7,544 bases of DNA from Octopus sinensis (Eukaryota), in contig NW_021828831.1 of NCBI RefSeq assembly GCF_006345805.1, forward strand, positions 1 to 7,544. Direction: 5' to 3'. The first letter of the stretch is position 1, and the number at the start of each line of letters is the position of its first letter. Positions 1-6,976 of this stretch are shown here, in pieces. The position numbers were made by a program, and so were the translations under genes. A model generated the notes under the pieces. The model was not told the origin of the DNA and did not search any database. It saw nothing but the letters and a program-made list of their open reading frames with translations.

Positions 1-111
1 TCTCCATTAGAGAAAGAGCCGGATTCCAACCCAGAAAAAAGGCCCTTTCATTGGAATTCAAACATCTTAATTTAACTATGCATGTACGTGTAATGTGTAT
101 GTGTAGTATTG

Positions 112-164
112 ATGTATGTATGTATGTATGTATGTATGTAATGTATGTATGCATGAGTGGTATG
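112..164. repeat. (TATG)n/(TACA)n microsatellite
   Basis: Direct reading: tandem TATG units with one GTAATG interruption and a degenerate right end. Confidence 0.95.
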
Positions 165-789
165 TTTGTTTTTTTGTTTCTTTTTAATTTAGAATAAAGT
201 TTGGGCCGGTCATCATGGCTGTGATGGAAGCATCTTGGTTTTTTTTTCGTCCTTTAAATCTTAAAGTTGTTTGCTGTTGTTTGTTCCTTTTCAAGCCATG
301 CCTGGCTCATAAGGGCCGGTTTTCCTTCCCGTTTCCTTGGCGTATAGGTTCCCTACCTGGACAGCGACGCCATCCGTCGCAGGTGAGCTGCAAGATGCAG
401 GAGGAAAAGAGTGAGAGAAAGTTGTGGCGAAAGAGTTCGCAGAGGGTTCGCCATCACCTGCTGTCGGAGCCGCGTGTGTGTTTCGCCATAAACACACACA
501 TCGCCGGTCTGAGATTCGAACTCGCGATCCCCTCTACCGCGATTCAGCTGCGCTAACCACTAGGCCATGTGCCTCCAAATCTTAAGAAGTACTTGCAGCT
601 TTTTATAATCCCAGATATCGTGATAATTTATAATGTATGAATTAAGGATTAGCGTTATCTCCTGAAGAGCCTAAACTCAGCCACACTTGGCCTCAGGTGG
701 AATTGTATGTATCCTGTTGCTCCGGTGGTAATAGATATGAAGCTGGAGGTGTATCTTGGGTGCCGGATTGTGAAAAACCGTTATCACAA
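165..789 (-). mobile_element. RLE-type (R4/Dong-like) non-LTR retrotransposon 3' fragment, copy 1 (pseudogenised, interrupted by SINE A1)
   Basis: Minus-strand 759->577 translates in one frame as PRYTSSFISITTGATGYIQFHLRPSVAEFRLFRR*R*SLIHTL*IITISGIIKSCKYFLRF, then KG after the SINE is removed. This matches the recalled C-terminal pattern of RLE ORFs (PxYxFxFxPIIIGALGY...LQxxxIxGTxKxCKTFLxF). It is nucleotide-similar to 3000-3194. The 3' UTR (165-250) ends at (TACA)n. Confidence 0.75.
265..576 (-). mobile_element. tRNA-derived SINE, family A, copy A1
   Basis: Minus strand starts GGAGGCACATGGCCTAGTGGTTAG (A box) and has B box GAGTTCGAATCTC (511-523) and an (AAC)-rich tail. Perfect 9-bp TSD AAATCTTAA at 256-264 and 577-585. 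It shares an exact 32-nt block (406-437, inverted) with 2633-2664. Confidence 0.9.
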
Positions 790-858
790 TGTATGTATGT
801 AATGTATGTATGTATGTATGTATGTATGTATGTATGTATGTAGTGTGTAGTATGTATG
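790..858. repeat. (TATG)n/(TACA)n microsatellite
   Basis: Direct reading: long run of TATG units with GTAATG and TAGTGTG interruptions. Confidence 0.95.
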
Positions 859-860
859 TT

Positions 861-1165
861 TTGCCCTTCACATTTTAATTTATTATATTCTTCCTAGAAA
901 GAAGGAGCTAGTTTTTAAGAAAGAAACAAAAGCTCTATGACTAGAATTTCAATAACAACTACGATAATTGTTACATGTCAAACTTTAAGAAAGTCTTGCA
1001 CATTTTTACTGTTACACTTACTGACTGCATCTGCATAGTTCGTGTTAGTCTTGAAAATCTTAGCGGTTCCAGATTCTCACTTACATATTCAGTAACATAC
1101 CAAGCGTACCAATGGTTATTAGTAACGATGTAAATTTAAAATCAGAGTAGATGAGCTGCACATTT
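861..1165 (-). mobile_element. RLE-type non-LTR retrotransposon 3' fragment, copy 2
   Basis: Minus strand: QLIYSDFKFTSLLITIGTLG (1158->1099), a 1-nt frameshift, then YVTEYVSENLEPLRFSRLTRTMQMQSVSVTVKMCKTFLKFDM* (1099->971, stop TAA 973-971). A ~110-nt 3' UTR with AATAAA (884-879) ends at the (TACA)n tract. Confidence 0.75.
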
Positions 1166-1330
1166 TGTACATATACGAATGTGTGTATACGTGGGTATAT
1201 ACTTTCACATTTATGTTTGTGTGAATATGTATGGTTGTGTGTGTGTGGATCTATGTTTAAACTCACGTATGGGTATATATACATATGTTTATTTGTCAAT
1301 GTGTGCGTATTTTTCTGTATATGTACCTAC
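1166..1330. repeat. Degenerate (TG)/(TA)/(TATG) low-complexity tract
   Basis: Mixed TG/TA dinucleotide and TATG units. It may include the decayed 3' UTR of RLE copy 3. Confidence 0.7.
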
Positions 1331-1588
1331 AACAAACTAAACACCCGGAGTGCTTGCAGTTTTTATTTCCATTAATGGTTTGTAATTAAAATTTCTTAAT
1401 TAGCCATGTCGTTTCTGATTTATGAAGCTCAGCTTCTCGTGAATGGCACAGAGATAGTTAAGCTACATAAACTTACTGCTCCAATGATTACAGGTACAAA
1501 TCTAAAGTCGTAGTCTGTGTGCAATATCTTCAGATTTTTCTTCAGTTCAAAGATGTTACTTTTTTCTATCATCTTTAACATAATTTCT

Positions 1589-1997
1589 TTTATTTATTTT
1601 TTTTTTTTTCTTTACTTCTTTTAGTCATTAGACTGCGGTCATACTGGAGCACCGTCTTGAAGATTTTTAGTCAAACGAATCGACCCCAGTACTTATTTTT
1701 TAAAAATCTGGAACTTATTCTATCATTCTGCTTTGCCGAAACGCTAACTTATGTTAACGTAAACACGCCAACACTGGTCGTCAGACAGTTGGGGGGGGGG
1801 CAAAGATACACACACACATACACACGAACATATACGACTGGATTCTTTCAGTTTCCGTCTTCCATATCCACTCATAAGGCTTTAGTTTACCCGAGGCTAT
1901 AGTAAAAGATATTTGCTCAAGGTGCCACGCAGCGGAGTGAAACCGGCACCATGTGGTTGAGAAGCAAACTTCTTACCACACGGCCACGCCTGCACCT
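1589..1997 (-). mobile_element. tRNA-derived SINE, family B, copy B1
   Basis: Minus strand starts AGGTGCAGGCGTGGCCGTGTGGTAAG, has an internal (CA)n/G10 block and an A-rich tail (1589-1620). Perfect 10-bp TSD CATAATTTCT at 1579-1588 and 1998-2007. Homologous (inverted) to 5825-6206. Confidence 0.92.
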
Positions 1998-2144
1998 CAT
2001 AATTTCTGCAAAACCACTTATTTTCACAATTATACACCCCCGTTTTTTAAGTCTTAATCATAATGTCTAGTCTATTAGTAAAATCTATCAACGATTTCCA
2101 GATATTTTTTAAAAGGAATCAATTTATGATGGGCTCCCTCATAT

Positions 2145-2275
2145 ATTCCATCTACCAAGTTCAGTCGCAAGGCACTGGTTAGCCTGAGGTTATTATAAAA
2201 GCTACTCGGTTAAGATGCCATAAAGTGAAAACCGGACCCGAGACCTCGTGGTTACAAAACAAACACCTTAGCATA
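2145..2275 (-). mobile_element. Degenerate 5' portion of SINE family B
   Basis: TTCCATCTACCAAG...GCCTGAGGTTATTATAAAAG...AAGATGCCA...GTGGTTACAAAACAAAC aligns by eye with 1853-1977 of copy B1. Confidence 0.7.
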
Positions 2276-2484
2276 TTTATGTCTGCGCTTAAACAGCAAC
2301 CGAATATCTCTCAAACCACAGCTGTCTTAAGGAGCAATGCTGCATTACATAATATAGTCCTAGGTATATCATGTCTTTAAAAAAAAACGAGTAACTTATG
2401 GTCTTTTGTTTTTAGATTTAATAAAACGTATTTAATTTTTAAAAATTAAATCAAACTAAATACCACCAGTATTCGTTCATATTA

Positions 2485-2786
2485 GTGATGCCACATGGAC
2501 TACTGGTTAGAGCAGCAGACTTGCGGTCGGGTGATCGCAGGTTCGAATCTCAGACGGGGCGAGGTATGTGTTTATGAGCGAAACACTTAAACTCCGCGTG
2601 GCTCCGGCAGAAGGTAATGGTGAATTTCTGCTAACTCTTTCGCCACAACTTTCTCTCACTCTTTCCTCCTGCATCTAGCAGCTCACCAGCGACGGACCGG
2701 CGTCCCGTCCAGGTAGGGAACCTATACGCCAATGAAACCGAGAAACTGGCCTTTATGAGCCAAGCATGGCTCGAGAAGGAACAAAC
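2485..2786 (+). mobile_element. tRNA-derived SINE, family A, copy A2
   Basis: A box TGGACTACTGGTTAG (2496-2510) and B box GGTTCGAATCT (2540-2550). 14-bp TSD with 2 mismatches: ATTCGTTCATATTA (2471-2484) and ATTCTTTCATATCA (2787-2800). Inverted homolog of A1. Confidence 0.9.
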
Positions 2787-2999
2787 ATTCTTTCATATCA
2801 TGGGTGAATATCCTCTCCTTATCAATGGAATTTCTTATAATTTTATCTTCAATACTCTCCAAACTATGCATTGCACTGTGCACTGCTTTGGCCAGTACAT
2901 CACTTCTCATTGATAGATAGTTTCGTGGTTAATGATGAGAGTCTCATCTTTGGTTGTAATTCTACAAAATTTTTATCTCTGTCAATATATATCCTCTTC

Positions 3000-3194
3000 C
3001 TCCTTTCAATTTAGAATATATTTTGAGCCGGCGGCTAACTTGATAGCAAGGTTGTGAAAGAAAGCATCTTGTTTTAACCACTATCCTTTATATCTTAAAG
3101 TCTTTCAGATTTTTATAGTCCCGGATATCGTGATCATCTGTAACGTATGAGGTAAGGATTTGCGTTCTCTCCCCCAAGATCCCGAGTTCAGTCA
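3000..3194 (-). mobile_element. RLE-type non-LTR retrotransposon 3' fragment, copy 4
   Basis: Minus strand: TELGILG, a frameshift, then RERKSLPHTLQMITISGTIKI*KTLRYKG* (stop TAG 3083-3081). The coding end and 3' UTR align with 186-265 plus 577-680 of copy 1 (e.g. TTTAGAATA, GCCGG, AAGCATCTTG, ATCTTAAAG, GATATCGTGAT, TAAGGATT). Confidence 0.75.
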
Positions 3195-3248
3195 TACTGA
3201 ATTTTGACTGAACTCTCTGACTTTGCTCTCAAGTTCAGTTATACTTTG

Positions 3249-3292
3249 TTGTCGGGAAGCAAACTTCTTACCACTCAGCCACGCCAGCACCT
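3249..3292 (-). mobile_element. Isolated 5' head of SINE family B
   Basis: GGGAAGCAAACTTCTTACCACTCAGCCACGCCAGCACCT is nearly identical to 1960-1997. Confidence 0.8.
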
Positions 3293-3406: not shown

Positions 3407-4003
3407 TTATTACCTCCGCCTTAAACAGGCGGAGTTATTGTTTTCAATCGCGTTTGTTTGTTTGTCCGTAAGATATCTCAAGAACTGTTGGATGGATTCG
3501 GATGAAACTTTCAGGGATGTTTGGCCTCGTTATTGGCACAAACTGATTAGATTTTGGGATCGATCCAATACCGGACAAGGGTTCTAGATTATTTGCTATA
3601 TTTACTTTATATGATTACGATCTTACGTTAACTTTCAAGTCTTTCCGAATTATGTCCCTTTAGGCTGTAACTATTTTGAATGGTGAATTTGTTAACTTTG
3701 GCTTGTATTAGATAAGGATAAACTATTCATTACTCTTACAAAATTTACTACAGCCACCTTCACATTCCATGACTACCATTGGGATCGATCAGGTATCGGA
3801 CAAGGATTTTGAATTATTTTTCCGGTCTTTAGAAATTTTTTTTACTTAATTTTTGAGAGCTGTCGGGTTCATTTTTAGTATTCTCATTTGTGAGAGCAGT
3901 CGAGTTTATTTCAGATATTCTCATTTTAAAAATCATCTCTGGTTAATCGTTGAGAGGACGTTGGTGTTACCTTGGCGGTGGTTTGTGCTCTCTGAGTGCT
4001 CTT
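3407..4003 (+). mobile_element. Non-autonomous Helentron/DINE-1-like element (HINE)
   Basis: The 5' end TTATTACCTCCGCC has a nearby inverted copy (CTCCGCC 3414-3420 / GGCGGAG 3428-3434) followed by (GTTT)3-GTCC. The 3' end has subterminal inverted repeat GGCGGTGGT (3974-3982), then a short hairpin GTGCTC-TCT-GAGTGC (3985-3999) and a T-rich end. This architecture is established for Helentron-associated interspersed elements. Confidence 0.7.
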
Positions 4004-4500
4004 GTTGGTATTGTTTTTGTCGTTATTTTTTGTATTACTTTCGCTGTTATTGTTGATGTGCTGTTGTATTATATAAGTGCTGTTCTTATTTTAGTTGTTA
4101 CGTTCGTTTTTTTTTTTATCATTATATTTGTTTTTAAAGCAGCGAGCTGGCAGATTCGTTAGCACGCCAGGCAAGATACTTTTGTCTGTCTTTACGTTTT
4201 AAGTTCAATTTCCGCCAAGGCCGACTTCTCCTTTCATCCCTTCAGGGTCGATAAATTAAGTAGCAGTTGAGTACTGGGTCAATGTAATCGACTTACCACC
4301 TCACCTAAAATTTCAGGTCCTGTGCCTTTAGTAGAAAGGATTATTATATTTGTTTTTAAAATTATATTTGTTTTTTGTCGTTATATTTTTTTGTTATATT
4401 TGTTTTATTCTTGTTGTCTTGTTATTGCTGATATTTGTTTTCATTCTTTTTGATTTTTTGGCTTGTTTTTCTTTGTTCTTGTTGCTGTAACGAACATAAT
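4004..4500. repeat. Degenerate (GTT)/(ATT)-rich low-complexity tract hosting SINE C; continues left of the HINE (3300-3400)
   Basis: T-rich triplet-like sequence on both sides of the HINE and of SINE C. Confidence 0.7.
4139..4342 (+). mobile_element. tRNA-derived SINE, family C
   Basis: A box TGGCAGATTCG (4148-4158), B-box-like AGTTCAATTTCC (4202-4213), core CCTTTCATCCCTTCAGGGTCGATAAATTAAGTAGCAG and tail AGTAGAAAGGATTAT. Perfect 18-bp TSD ATTATATTTGTTTTTAAA at 4121-4138 and 4343-4360. Confidence 0.88.
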
Positions 4501-4528
4501 TTGGTCTAAAAAGTTAGATAGTCACACT

Positions 4529-4756
4529 CTGTCTGTTTGTCTCGCTCTCTCTCTCTCTCTCTCCCTCTCTATCTATTTATCTCTATCTATCTGTCTATCT
4601 ATCTATCACACACACACACACACAAGCATACATGCGCACAAACACATAAACATACACAAATATAAACACACACAAATACACACGTACTCATATGCACATA
4701 GATGCACACACATGCAAACACACATAAACAGGAACACACACAAACATACACACACA

Positions 4757-4797
<41 letters not shown>
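4529..4797. repeat. Compound microsatellite (CT)n-(CTAT)n-(CA)n
   Basis: Direct reading. It accounts for ORFs 4463..4930, 4599..4796 and 4606..4818. Confidence 0.95.
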
Positions 4798-4798
<1 letters not shown>

Positions 4799-5183
4799 AA
4801 GCATGATTGTGTCTGCACTTTATGCGTTATATCGAAAATCTTCCCTCTTCTCGTAACGGTTCTTCAATATCAAAACTTCATATTTTTTTTCCTCTGTCGG
4901 TTTAGCAATCAATTCTTGTTCAAATTTTGACTCTCAACCCGACCTATATCCATCCATCCATCCATGCCTGTTATCCAATAATCCATATACATGAATGCAT
5001 AATTATAATTCAAATATATATTGAGAGCAAAAGAAAAAAAAATACATTTATTCTTTATTTTTTCCAATAATTATATAGTTTTAATATACAGTAAATATTC
5101 GCATGAAAGCTTTGTTTTTAAATTATATTTTTCTTGCAAAAAAATTTGTTTTATTTGTTCTGCTTATATTATATGTTGTGCTG

Positions 5184-5294: not shown

Positions 5295-5354
5295 ATGTGT
5301 ACACACACAAATACATACATACACATAATATTATACATACATATATGCATATGC

Positions 5355-5824: not shown

Positions 5825-6206
5825 GTAGTGGCTGTGTGGTATGTAGCTTGCTTACCAACTACATGGCTCCGAGTTCAGTCGCGCTGCGTGGAACATTGGG
5901 CAAGTGTCTTCTACTATAGCCTCGAGCCGACCAAATCCTTGTAAGTGGATTTAGTAGACGGAAACTGAAAGAAACCCGTCATGTGTTTGTGTGTCTGTGT
6001 TTGTCTCCACAACATCGCTTGACAACCAATGCTGGTGTGTTTACATCTCCGTAACTTAGAGTTTCGGCAAAAGAGACCGATAGAATAAGTACTAGGCTTA
6101 CAAAGAATAAGTCCTGAGGTCGATTTGCTCGACTAAAGGCGGTGCCCCAGCATGACCGCAGTCAAATGACTGAAACAAGTAAAAGAGTAAAGAGTAGAGT
6201 AAAAGA
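5825..6206 (+). mobile_element. tRNA-derived SINE, family B, copy B2
   Basis: A box TGGCTGTGTGG (5829-5839), B-box-like GAGTTCAGTC (5871-5880), internal (TG)n and tail of GAGTAAA-like repeats (6177-6206). Homologous to B1 and B3. No TSD found. Confidence 0.92.
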
Positions 6207-6207
6207 G

Positions 6208-6287
6208 CATATATATATATATATATATATAATATATATGGTGGAGTATATGTAGATATAGATAGTTACATACACGGACAAGCAGAC

Positions 6288-6443: not shown

Positions 6444-6976
6444 GACGATGCTGGGGCACTACTTTGAAGGGTTTTAGTTGAAGGAATCGGCGCCACTAAT
6501 TCTCAAACGCCCGGTACATATTCTGACGATCACTTTCCCGAACAGTAAGTTACGAGGACGTAAACAAACCAACGCTGGTTGTCTTGCGGTGGTGGAGGAC
6601 AAACACGAACACACAACACACACATATATATATATATATTTCACAAAAAAAAGACGAAGAAAGGTGGTGTAGACAACAAATTGATGTATTAGTATAACGC
6701 TGGGGAAGTGAAAAAGTCTTTAACGTTTCGAACCTATGCTCTTCCATAGAAAGGAACACATAAAGAAACAAGGAGAGAAAATAAAGAATGTGTAGAATTT
6801 TGCGATCTATCATGGCAAAGGCCATATATATGAAGGGCTTCTTTCAGTTGCTGTATACCATGTTCACTCAAGATGTTTTGTATAATAGCAAAACGCGAGC
6901 CCAACATGCCCGAGGTGGAACCGAACCCGGAAACGTGTAGTTGGAAGGCAAACTTCTTACCTCACAGCCATGCCTG
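6444..6976 (-). mobile_element. tRNA-derived SINE, family B, copy B3 (diverged, split by a nested insertion)
   Basis: 6444-6639 matches the 3' half (ATGCTGGGGCAC, AAGTTACGAGGACGTAAAC, GGACAAACAC) and 6824-6976 matches the 5' half (GGGCTTCTTTCAG, GAACCCGGAA, GCAAACTTCTTAC, CACAGCCA) of family B. Confidence 0.85.
6640..6823 (-). mobile_element. Nested insertion, probable Penelope-like retroelement terminal fragment
   Basis: About 184 bp with no family-B homology, flanked on both sides by (TA)n inside the SINE's microsatellite. It contains minus-strand CCTTT-CTATGGA-A-GAGC-ATAG-GTTC-GAAAC-GTT-AAAG, a degenerate minimal hammerhead layout typical of Penelope terminal repeats. The family assignment is inference. 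Confidence 0.55.

What the first reader, a model, noticed from the sequence alone, without database searches (positions are those of the whole stretch)
165..3194. Hidden head-to-tail array of four co-oriented RLE retrotransposon 3' ends
Seen: four separate minus-strand segments each encode the same C-terminal motif block (GATG...SGIIKSCKYFLRF at 723-577; GTLG...VTVKMCKTFLKF at 1110-980; PVIIGA...LQTING..CK at 1494-1353; SGTIKI*KTLRY at 3128-3090). All share one orientation and are packed nearly end to end over 3 kb. None is visible in the ORF track because of stops, frameshifts and SINE insertions. Established: R2-group non-LTR elements (R2, R4/Dong, NeSL, CRE, Hero) end in a CCHC knuckle plus a PD-(D/E)xK restriction-like endonuclease, are often sequence-specific, and leave 5'-truncated copies. 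Inference: repeated, orientation-locked insertion into the same target has built a retrotransposon graveyard array, comparable in logic to site-specific elements stacking in rDNA, telomeric or microsatellite targets.
Basis: partly seen in the sequence, partly recalled or inferred. Interest (0 to 1): 0.75.

Follow-up and report, generated by a model that had tools for sequence, protein, structure and literature searches.

The report
Stacked microsatellite-targeting retrotransposon tail fragments
A 3-kb stretch of what looks like octopus DNA holds five decayed, same-direction tail ends of one jumping-gene family that inserts into (ACAT)n simple repeats, which is a real but expected pattern for this known class of element.

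Summary
All four peptide blocks match the C-terminus of a real RT + CCHC + restriction-like-endonuclease (RLE) non-LTR family (P0270-P0272, L004, L005). tblastn E-values are about 1e-8 to 1e-6 for segments 1-3. Segment 4 is weaker, but its frameshift-aware score is 64 against a null maximum of 38. A fifth minus-strand fragment lies at 2925-2457, and segment 3 extends to 2076 across a SINE. Three SINE insertions with target-site duplications break the copies.

Copies 1 and 2 each end in a short 3'UTR plus (ACAT)n, and copy 3 ends in an ACAY-rich tract. Copies 1 and 2 start within a few bases of the tail upstream. Three near-full-length relatives from other samples (L001, L004, L005) are flanked on both sides by same-strand (ACAT)n. 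The family is therefore (ACAT)n-specific and orientation-locked.

The copies differ in 5' truncation point. Apart from copies 1 and 4 (80%), they are only 61-76% identical, so they are independent insertions and not a block duplication.

Microsatellite-specific RLE LINEs (Dong, some HERO, Togen) are established, and Dong-R4 and Hero LINEs are already catalogued in octopus. This is at most a new member of a known kind.

The parts
96..155 (-). (ACAT)n tail of copy 1, read as (TGTA)n/(ATGT)n on the plus strand
   Evidence: TRF period 4, 14.5 copies. Aligns with the (CATA)n tail of L001.
165..252 (-). Copy 1 3'UTR. The original stop, two codons after FLRF, has mutated to CGA. The conserved 3'UTR motif carries a deletion.
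   Evidence: Homologous to the copy 4 UTR: blastn 179-267 vs 3001-3101; nhmmer 251-170, E 8e-10, though that profile included copy 1's own sequence; alignment.
253..264 (-). Copy 1 ORF end (...LRFK), 3' side of the SINE-A1 insertion
   Evidence: The tblastn HSP runs across the excised SINE, 780->253.
265..576 (-). SINE-A1, a later insertion into copy 1. Perfect 9-bp TSD AAATCTTAA at 256-264 and 577-585.
   Evidence: 81% identical to the inverted copy at 2468-2787. TSD printed.
586..780 (-). Copy 1 ORF fragment, family residues ~360-414 (RHPRYTSSFISITTGATGY...ITISGIIKSCKYFLRF). The 5' truncation lies within 8 nt of the upstream (ACAT)n.
   Evidence: tblastn 40-42 bits, E 2e-7 to 2e-8. L004 probe E 6e-7.
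789..859 (-). (ACAT)n tail of copy 2, which is also the 5' junction of copy 1
   Evidence: TRF period 4, 18 copies, 88% matches.
862..973 (-). Copy 2 3'UTR, plus the stop codon at 971-973 (KFDM*, the same position as in the family)
   Evidence: Alignments.
974..1170 (-). Copy 2 ORF fragment, residues ~345-416, with one frameshift near 1099
   Evidence: tblastn 37-38 + 23.5 bits, E 1e-7 to 4e-7. L004 probe E 1.4e-8. Frameshift-aware alignment scores 93-105.
1175..1335 (-). ACAY-rich degenerate low-complexity tract between the end of copy 3 and the start of copy 2. Probably the decayed tail of copy 3.
   Evidence: Sequence; alignment. blastn similarity to the CA-rich tracts at 4574-4800.
1340..1588 (-). 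Copy 3, 3' part: residues ~330-416 (IMLKMIEKSNIF.ELKKNL...FRFVPVIIGA...LQTINGNKNCK). No recognisable 3'UTR.
   Evidence: tblastn 37-38 bits, E 3e-6. Frameshift-aware alignment 2076->1368, scores 99-116.
1589..1997 (-). SINE-B, a later insertion into copy 3. Perfect 10-bp TSD CATAATTTCT at 1579-1588 and 1998-2007.
   Evidence: 79% identical to the plus-strand copy at 5828-6232. TSD printed.
2008..2076 (-). Copy 3, 5' part: decayed RLE catalytic core (NRLDIMI...KRGCIIVKIS...)
   Evidence: The tblastn HSP runs across the excised SINE-B, 2045->1450, 39.7 bits, E 1.3e-7. The frameshift-aware alignment reaches 2076.
2126..2273 (-). Old SINE-B-like fragment between copy 5 and copy 3 (weak)
   Evidence: 60% identity over 146 nt to SINE-B positions 17-162.
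2290..2456 (-). Unresolved stretch. It may be the degenerate continuation of copy 5.
   Evidence: No alignment to any part of the family protein exceeds the shuffles.
2457..2470 (-). Copy 5, part 3' of the SINE-A2 insertion (EYWWYL, family residues ~287-292)
   Evidence: tblastn HSPs across the excised SINE: P0270 residues 240-290 at 2925->2463, P0272 reaching 2457.
2490..2786 (+). SINE-A2, a later insertion into copy 5. Decayed ~19-bp TSD ATTCGTTCATATTAGTGAT / ATTCTTTCATATCATGGGTG at 2471-2489 and 2787-2806.
2787..2925 (-). Copy 5 ORF fragment, residues 240-286, the region between the CCHC knuckle and the RLE (RNYLSMRSDVLAKAV...). It may extend to ~2972.
   Evidence: tblastn 28 bits alone and 36 bits, E 1.7e-6, with the SINE excised. 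Frameshift-aware score 92.
2989..3083 (-). Copy 4 3'UTR, including the stop codon TAG at 3081-3083 and the conserved motif CCTTGCTATCAAGTTAGCCGCCGG. No (ACAT)n follows, only ~20 nt of AT-rich sequence before copy 5.
   Evidence: A UTR profile built only from L001-L003 has its best hit at 3059-3028 on the minus strand, E 0.057. Alignment.
3084..3198 (-). Copy 4 ORF fragment, residues ~377-416 (SMTELGI...LQMITISGTIKI*KTLRYKG)
   Evidence: Frameshift-aware score 64 vs null maximum 38. tblastn E 0.002-0.006. 80% nt identity to copy 1.

Best explanation
The region is a graveyard of five 5'-truncated, pseudogenised 3' ends of one family of non-LTR retrotransposons. The family encodes RT, a CCHC knuckle and a C-terminal restriction-like endonuclease. 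It has no APE domain and no detectable N-terminal zinc finger or Myb domain, so it resembles R4/Dong or HERO.

The family is specific for the tetranucleotide microsatellite (ACAT)n and carries (ACAT)n as its own 3' tail. Each insertion is made by target-primed reverse transcription at a nick inside an (ACAT)n tract. Because the repeat is strand-asymmetric, and the RNA tail can presumably pair with only one strand of the target, orientation is fixed relative to the repeat. Every new copy also brings a fresh (ACAT)n tail in the same orientation, which is the next landing pad. Copies therefore pile up head to tail and co-oriented.

Reverse transcription usually aborts early, so only the last 40-180 codons plus a short 3'UTR remain. 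Unrelated SINEs (SINE-A twice, SINE-B at least once) inserted later, and point mutations and indels destroyed the frames.

Shown: homology of all five fragments to the family; their common strand; the junctions with (ACAT)n; the SINE target-site duplications; and (ACAT)n on both flanks of three relatives.

Inferred: that the RLE cleaves (ACAT)n; that tail-target pairing primes reverse transcription; and the order of the insertions.
For: - Homology of the fragments: with null distributions.
- Family architecture: RVT_1 and R2-like RT, E 5e-20; CCHC; the RLE, where P0270 matches the A1 profile at 98.6% probability and the A1 profile matches the R2 RLE domain in PDB at E 4e-6; no APE.
- Tail and target: L001 has (ATAC)n at 1-15 and (CATA)n at 3561-3650. 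L004 has (CATA)22 at 1-88 and (ATAC)18 at 4470-4541. L005 has (ATAC)29 at 1-116 and (ACAT)29 at 4011-4125. In all three the repeat is on the element's strand.
- Window junctions: (ACAT)n at 96-155 and 789-859 directly 3' of copies 1 and 2. Copy 1 starts at 780, 8 nt from the repeat.
- Independence of the copies: different truncation points and 61-76% pairwise identity apart from c1-c4 at 80%.
- Literature: RLE clades are mostly target-specific, and microsatellite-specific families exist (PMC4640811). Dong-R4 and Hero LINEs are abundant in octopus (PMC10294476, PMC13282606).
Against: - Copy 4 has no (ACAT)n between its UTR and copy 5, only ~20 nt of AT-rich sequence.
- Copy 5 has no identifiable 3' end.
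- Copy 3 lacks the conserved 3'UTR.
- Five fragments on one strand has a chance probability of only 1/16, so orientation locking rests mainly on the junctions and on the three outside relatives.
- No genome-wide census was possible.
- Cleavage specificity of the RLE is untested.
- The source organisms of L001-L009 are unknown.
- The octopus origin of the window is inferred from my recollection of its SINEs.
Confidence: 0.85

Rival explanations
1. Partly nested rather than purely head to tail. Copy 5 (residues 240 to ~292, perhaps to ~345) and copy 2 (residues ~345-416 plus UTR and tail) are the two halves of one older element. It was split when copy 3, with its ACAY-rich tail and an old SINE-B piece at its 5' junction, inserted into it in the same orientation. 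The array would then be copy 4 | copy 5+2 (with copy 3 inside) | copy 1.
For: Copy 5 and copy 2 are collinear and do not overlap on the family protein. Copy 5 has no 3' end of its own, and copy 2 starts about where copy 5 could end. By eye, KSKNKRP*VT and YIM*CSIAP*DS at ~2420-2330 resemble the NRPDIV and IIEVACPLD motifs (frames printed).
Against: The stretch 2460-2290 gives no alignment above the shuffles. The best, non-significant alignment places residues 344-383 there, which would overlap copy 2. No target-site duplication is visible around the putative insert. The site inside the ORF is not an (ACAT)n tract.
Confidence: 0.25
2. The array arose by tandem or segmental duplication of one LINE-tail-plus-microsatellite unit, for example by unequal crossing-over between (ACAT)n tracts, and not by repeated insertion.
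For: Microsatellites promote unequal exchange. Copies 1 and 4 are 80% identical over 111 nt and share the same short UTR.
Against: The five fragments all have different 5' end points: residues ~360, ~345, <=303, <=240 and ~377. Pairs other than c1-c4 are 61-76% identical (the higher values over overlaps of 19-44 nt), no closer than to the foreign relatives L001-L003. Copy 2 carries a UTR variant distinct from that of c1 and c4, and copy 3 has no recognisable UTR. Spacing between units is irregular.
Confidence: 0.05
3. Chance clustering of unrelated decayed LINE fragments in a repeat-rich region, with microsatellites that arose independently and no target preference.
For: The window is saturated with SINEs and microsatellites. 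Five of five fragments on one strand has p = 0.06 by chance.
Against: All five fragments belong to one family, and none lies elsewhere in the 7.5-kb window. The junctions fall at the microsatellites. Three outside relatives are bounded on both sides by the same repeat on the same strand.
Confidence: 0.03

Closest known systems
Dong (R4 clade), the (TAA)n-specific RLE non-LTR retrotransposon of Bombyx mori, and the 'Dong-R4' LINEs annotated in octopus genomes (PMC4640811; PMC13282606; PMC10294476)
   Same: A single ORF with RT, a CCHC knuckle and a C-terminal RLE, and no APE. It inserts into a microsatellite in a fixed orientation. Copies are 5'-truncated. Elements of this label are abundant and recently active in Octopus vulgaris.
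   Different: The target and tail here are (ACAT)n, not (TAA)n. Clade membership by RT phylogeny was not tested, so the family could equally be HERO-like.
HERO clade families with microsatellite specificity, and Togen, (TG)n-specific and near NeSL/HERO (PMC4640811)
   Same: RLE-encoding elements, with no N-terminal zinc finger or Myb domain detected here, and microsatellite targets.
   Different: A different repeat unit. No phylogenetic placement was done here.
R2 (28S rDNA-specific). Solved structures 9nl3, 9dou, 8gh6, 8ibw
   Same: The RT is homologous (E 5e-20). The CCHC and RLE regions are homologous at profile level. The mechanism is TPRT at a specific target, with tandem or stacked, 5'-truncated copies in the target array.
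   Different: No N-terminal zinc finger or Myb domain was detected in the near-full-length relative L001. The target is a microsatellite and not 28S rDNA.
Waldo (R1 clade), specific for ACAY repeats. From my own knowledge of Kojima and Fujiwara 2003/2004, which are cited in PMC5035012.
   Same: Nearly the same target repeat, (ACAY)n, and the same outcome of co-oriented copies in the repeat.
   Different: Waldo encodes an APE endonuclease and belongs to the R1 clade. This is convergent target choice, not homology of the nuclease.

Membership tests
RLE-encoding (R2-group) non-LTR retrotransposons | Non-LTR-type reverse transcriptase domain | tested here: met
   Met in the family relatives: RVT_1 E 2e-27 in the L001 ORF and E 1e-20 in P0272; R2 structures E 5e-20. 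The window copies are 5'-truncated and hold no RT sequence.
RLE-encoding (R2-group) non-LTR retrotransposons | C-terminal PD-(D/E)xK restriction-like endonuclease | tested here: met
   P0270 against the A1 profile: 98.6% probability, E 6.5e-16, covering NRPDI...IIEVACPLD...KE.EK. The A1 profile against the R2 RLE region in PDB: E 4e-6. Window copy 3 keeps a decayed core, NRLDI...CIIVKIS...EK.
RLE-encoding (R2-group) non-LTR retrotransposons | CCHC zinc knuckle between RT and RLE | tested here: inconclusive
   CRLC...H...C is visible in P0270-P0272 and aligns with the R2 CRHC...H...C. Pfam zf-RVT hits are below threshold for this family and for the wider relatives. In the window, the candidate KFCR at ~2972 is not significant.
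RLE-encoding (R2-group) non-LTR retrotransposons | Absence of an APE (Exo_endo_phos) domain | tested here: met
   No such Pfam hit in eight full-length wider relatives or in the L001 ORF.
Microsatellite-specific non-LTR retrotransposons (Dong, Togen, some HERO) | Copies flanked 5' and 3' by the same microsatellite in one orientation | tested here: met
   Met in L001, L004 and L005, that is 3 of 3 relatives with both ends visible. Also met at window copies 1 and 2. Not met at the copy 4 / copy 5 junction.
R4/Dong clade versus HERO clade | Placement in an RT phylogeny with reference elements | not testable with these tools
   No Repbase or Dfam reference sequences were available. Only the absence of N-terminal zinc finger and Myb domains argues against R2, NeSL and CRE.
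Dong sensu stricto | (TAA)n target | tested here: not met
   The flanking repeat is (ACAT)n.
R2 sensu stricto | N-terminal zinc finger and Myb domains, and insertion in 28S rDNA | tested here: not met
   No N-terminal domain hit in L001. No rRNA match in the window.
Waldo (R1 clade, ACAY-specific) | APE endonuclease at the N-terminus | tested here: not met
   No APE, and an RLE is present instead.

The most novel reading that the evidence does not exclude
This clade may be an undescribed lineage of RLE retrotransposons whose tetranucleotide target has switched between sister groups. The window's group (L001, L004, L005) uses (ACAT)n, and L006-L008 are associated with (ACTT)n. That would make it a natural system for asking how an R2-like protein and its RNA tail re-programme target choice. 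In addition, the partial SINE-B heads lying directly 5' of copies 3 and 4 could be template-switch chimeras, that is, snapshots of SINE birth on this LINE's tail.
Probability: 0.2. Interest if true: 0.45.

Novelty: new member of a known kind. Interest (0 to 1): 0.22.

Why it matters
It shows that eye-read peptide motifs in heavily decayed DNA can be real. It also gives a clean worked example of how a microsatellite-specific LINE builds co-oriented stacks by landing in its own tail. For cephalopod genomics it suggests that some tetranucleotide microsatellites, and the LINE-tail clusters beside them, are products of Dong/HERO-like elements, which matters for repeat annotation and for microsatellite marker design. 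The sister groups with different repeat targets could inform work on re-targeting R2-type insertion systems. None of this changes current understanding of these elements.

Tried and rejected
- The 50-aa ORF at 1429-1581 found nothing through the word-indexed search.
Profiles built from those 120-269 proteins detected only segment 3, and only marginally. That wider family was too distant, so it was used only to establish that the domain is an RLE.
- A second frame open in both copies 1 and 4 (..YHDIWDYKKL.. / ..DHDIRDYKNL..) was considered as the true coding frame.
- A possible sixth copy at the left edge (1-95) is not supported by nhmmer or by the frameshift-aware alignment.
- A plus-strand tRNA-like SINE head inside copies 1 and 4 (a shared 12-mer CCGAGTTCAGTC with SINE-B) was judged near chance expectation. 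It is also inconsistent with the homology that extends upstream of it.
- Extension of copy 5 into 2460-2290 and up to ~2972 was not significant.
- Rfam and tRNA scans of the window gave only low-complexity noise.
- Looking up a window ORF to find the source contig found nothing on record.
Full report
**What the window is.** The 7,544-bp window is AT-rich eukaryotic DNA full of microsatellites and tRNA-derived SINEs. From my own recollection of the large SINE (here called SINE-B: 1589-1997 on the minus strand, 5828-6232 on the plus strand) it looks like an octopus genome. That is an inference and was not tested.

**Checking the observation.**
- At the DNA level only segments 1 and 4 are mutual homologues. 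They match at 572-687 vs 3085-3198 and 179-267 vs 3001-3101, with 72% identity over the full ~200-column alignment and 80% over the ORF end.
- Segments 2 and 3 show no DNA similarity to the others under blastn.
- The uninterrupted 50-aa ORF in segment 3 found nothing in the word-indexed protein search.

**Establishing the domain.**
It fetched 1,067 real proteins.
- A profile of these (alignment A1) matches the C-terminal restriction-like endonuclease region of solved R2 retrotransposon proteins (9nl3, 9dou; E about 4e-6).
- An exhaustive search with A1 found 24,076 representative clusters.
- Full-length members carry RVT_1 in the middle, a zf-RVT/CCHC-like knuckle, and this domain at the C-terminus. 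They have no APE domain.
These profiles are too distant from the window's copies, however: only segment 3 was hit, marginally, at i-E about 0.05.

**Finding the right subfamily.** I concatenated all candidate-frame peptides from the four segments, with X at stops, into one query. It retrieved P0270, P0271 and P0272. These end ...NRPDI..IIEVACPLD..KE.EK..IYGPLIRNLQL..FSFVPIIIGATGYV...RKLQVLTISGTVKIAKTFLKFxx*.

**Matches of that subfamily to the window.** With tblastn:
- Segment 1, 780-577: 40-42 bits, E about 2e-7.
- Segment 2, 1170-1099 plus 1099-974: 37-38 + 23.5 bits, E about 3e-7.
- Segment 3, 1584-1450: 37-38 bits, E 3e-6.
- Segment 4, 3170-3087: 27 bits, E 0.006.
- A new hit, 2925-2815: residues 240-277, 28 bits.

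In 100 dinucleotide shuffles of the window the best hit had a median of 21.9 bits and a maximum of 26.2. A frameshift-aware alignment of segment 4 scores 64 against a null maximum of 38. Translations of the independent relatives L004 and L005 hit the same four places and nothing else in the window.

The family itself has these properties:
- Its RT is R2-like (E 5e-20).
- Its C-terminus aligns with the A1 RLE profile at 98.6% probability.
- The near-full-length relative L001 shows no N-terminal zinc finger or Myb domain and no APE.

**Anatomy.** Three SINE insertions interrupt the copies, each with a target-site duplication:
- SINE-A1, 265-576: TSD AAATCTTAA, twice, perfect.
- SINE-B, 1589-1997: TSD CATAATTTCT, twice, perfect.
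- SINE-A2, 2490-2786: a decayed ~19-bp TSD.

When only the flanks are joined, the protein alignments run across the junctions. Copy 3 becomes residues ~303-403 at 2076->1368 and includes a decayed catalytic core, NRLDI...CIIVKIS...EK. The new fragment, copy 5, becomes residues 240-292 at 2925->2457 (36 bits, E 1.7e-6).

Read 5' to 3' on the minus strand, the region is:
1. Copy 4: 3198->3084 ORF end, stop at 3083-3081, UTR to ~2989.
2. About 20 nt of AT-rich sequence.
3. Copy 5: ~2925->2457, split by SINE-A2.
4. An unresolved stretch, 2456->2290.
5. A weak old SINE-B-like piece, 2273->2126.
6. Copy 3: 2076->1340, split by SINE-B.
7. An ACAY-rich tract, 1335->1175.
8. Copy 2: 1170->974, stop KFDM*, UTR to ~862.
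9. (ACAT)18, 859->789.
10. Copy 1: 780->253, split by SINE-A1, UTR to ~165.
11. (ACAT)15, 155->96.

There are therefore five fragments, all co-oriented. The true stop of the ORF lies two codons after FLKF. It is kept in copies 2 and 4 and mutated in copy 1.

**The target.**
- L001 is the contig that encodes P0270. It holds a ~3.55-kb element with RT and RLE that starts directly after (ATAC)n at 1-15. After a ~215-nt 3'UTR it ends in (CATA)n at 3561-3650.
- A collection scan found six more loci.
- The two closest loci, L004 and L005, have intact ORFs and are bounded on both sides by 70-115 bp of (ACAT)n on the element's own strand.
- A 3'UTR motif, CCTTGCTAT..GTTATAGCCGGT, is shared by L001-L003, L005 and window copy 4, and in deleted form by copy 1.
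- The family is therefore (ACAT)n-specific and orientation-locked. The (ACAT)n tracts in the window are both the tails of upstream copies and the landing sites of downstream ones.
- A sister lineage, L006-L008, is associated with (ACTT)n instead.

**Independent insertions or duplication?** The fragments begin at different residues: ~360, ~345, <=303, <=240 and ~377. Pairwise nucleotide identity over the shared ORF end is 61-76% (the higher values over overlaps of only 19-44 nt). This is no higher than identity to the foreign relatives L001-L003. The exception is copies 1 and 4 at 80%. The UTRs also differ between copy 2 and copies 1/4. This rules out a recent block duplication and indicates several separate insertion events from more than one subfamily.

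**What remains open.**
- Copy 5 has no 3' end of its own, and copy 2 begins roughly where copy 5 could end. The two may be one element split by a nested, same-orientation insertion of copy 3. The stretch that would decide this (2460-2290) gives no alignment above the shuffles.
- The copy 4 / copy 5 junction lacks a visible (ACAT)n.
- A suspected sixth copy at the left edge is not supported.

**Comparison with what is known.**
- RLE-encoding non-LTR elements fall into the CRE, R2, R4, NeSL and HERO clades. Most are target-specific, and microsatellite-specific families are established: Dong at (TAA)n, some HERO families, and Togen at (TG)n (PMC4640811).
- Among molluscs, R2-Hero and R4-Dong types are reported almost only from cephalopods (PMC10294476).
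- A 2026 annotation of Octopus vulgaris lists five recently active Dong-R4 families with 1,129 insertions (PMC13282606).
- The mechanism inferred here is the standard one for such elements.
- What I could not find described is (ACAT)n specificity for an RLE element. The ACAY-specific Waldo is an APE-bearing R1-clade element, which I state from my own knowledge. Repbase was not available to check.

**Verdict.** The finding is a new member of a known kind at most. Interest is low, about 0.2.

Noticed in passing
L006 401-477; L007 2770-2853; L008 3748-3837: More distant relatives of the same LINE clade (47-48% aa identity to P0270) are associated with (ACTT)n/(CTTA)n and not (ACAT)n. This suggests a switch of tetranucleotide target between sister lineages.
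   Followed up: partly
window 3247-3282 and 2126-2273 (minus strand): Partial 5' heads of SINE-B lie just upstream, in the minus sense, of two LINE fragments. One is 48 nt from copy 4 (81% over 36 nt). The other lies about 50 nt upstream of copy 3 (60% over 146 nt, weak). This could be chance, or it could be template-switch chimeras.
   Followed up: partly
window 3184-3215: An 11-bp perfect inverted repeat, GAGTTCAGTCA ... TGACTGAACTC, with a 10-nt loop, spanning the 5' end of copy 4. The arm resembles the B-box region of SINE-B.
   Followed up: no
window 265-576 (-) and 2490-2786 (+): Two copies of a ~310-bp tRNA-like SINE (SINE-A), 81% identical, in opposite orientations, each inserted into a LINE fragment. 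Both end in GGAACAAAC(AAC)n-like tails, unlike the LINE's (ACAT)n.
   Followed up: partly
window 5828-6232 (+), 6448-6632 and 6826-6976 (-): Further SINE-B copies. The two minus-strand pieces match consecutive parts of SINE-B and are probably one copy split by a ~190-bp insertion.
   Followed up: no
window ~3420-4010, incl. 3554-3594 / 3779-3819 and 3849-3926: A block with a 41-bp direct repeat pair and a 37-bp tandem repeat (two copies). It looks like another, unidentified interspersed element.
   Followed up: no
window ~4140-4330 (+): A third tRNA-like, SINE-like sequence (GCAGCGAGCTGGCAGATTCGTTAGCACGCC...), unrelated to SINE-A and SINE-B.
   Followed up: no
L004 4165-4380: The 3'UTR of this intact relative contains a 72-bp tandem repeat (3.1 copies). 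This makes its UTR much longer than the ~100-nt UTRs of the window copies.
   Followed up: no
window 5300-5351 (+): A plus-strand (TACA)n/(ACAT)n tract with no LINE fragment of this family beside it. Not every (ACAT)n in the window is occupied.
   Followed up: yes
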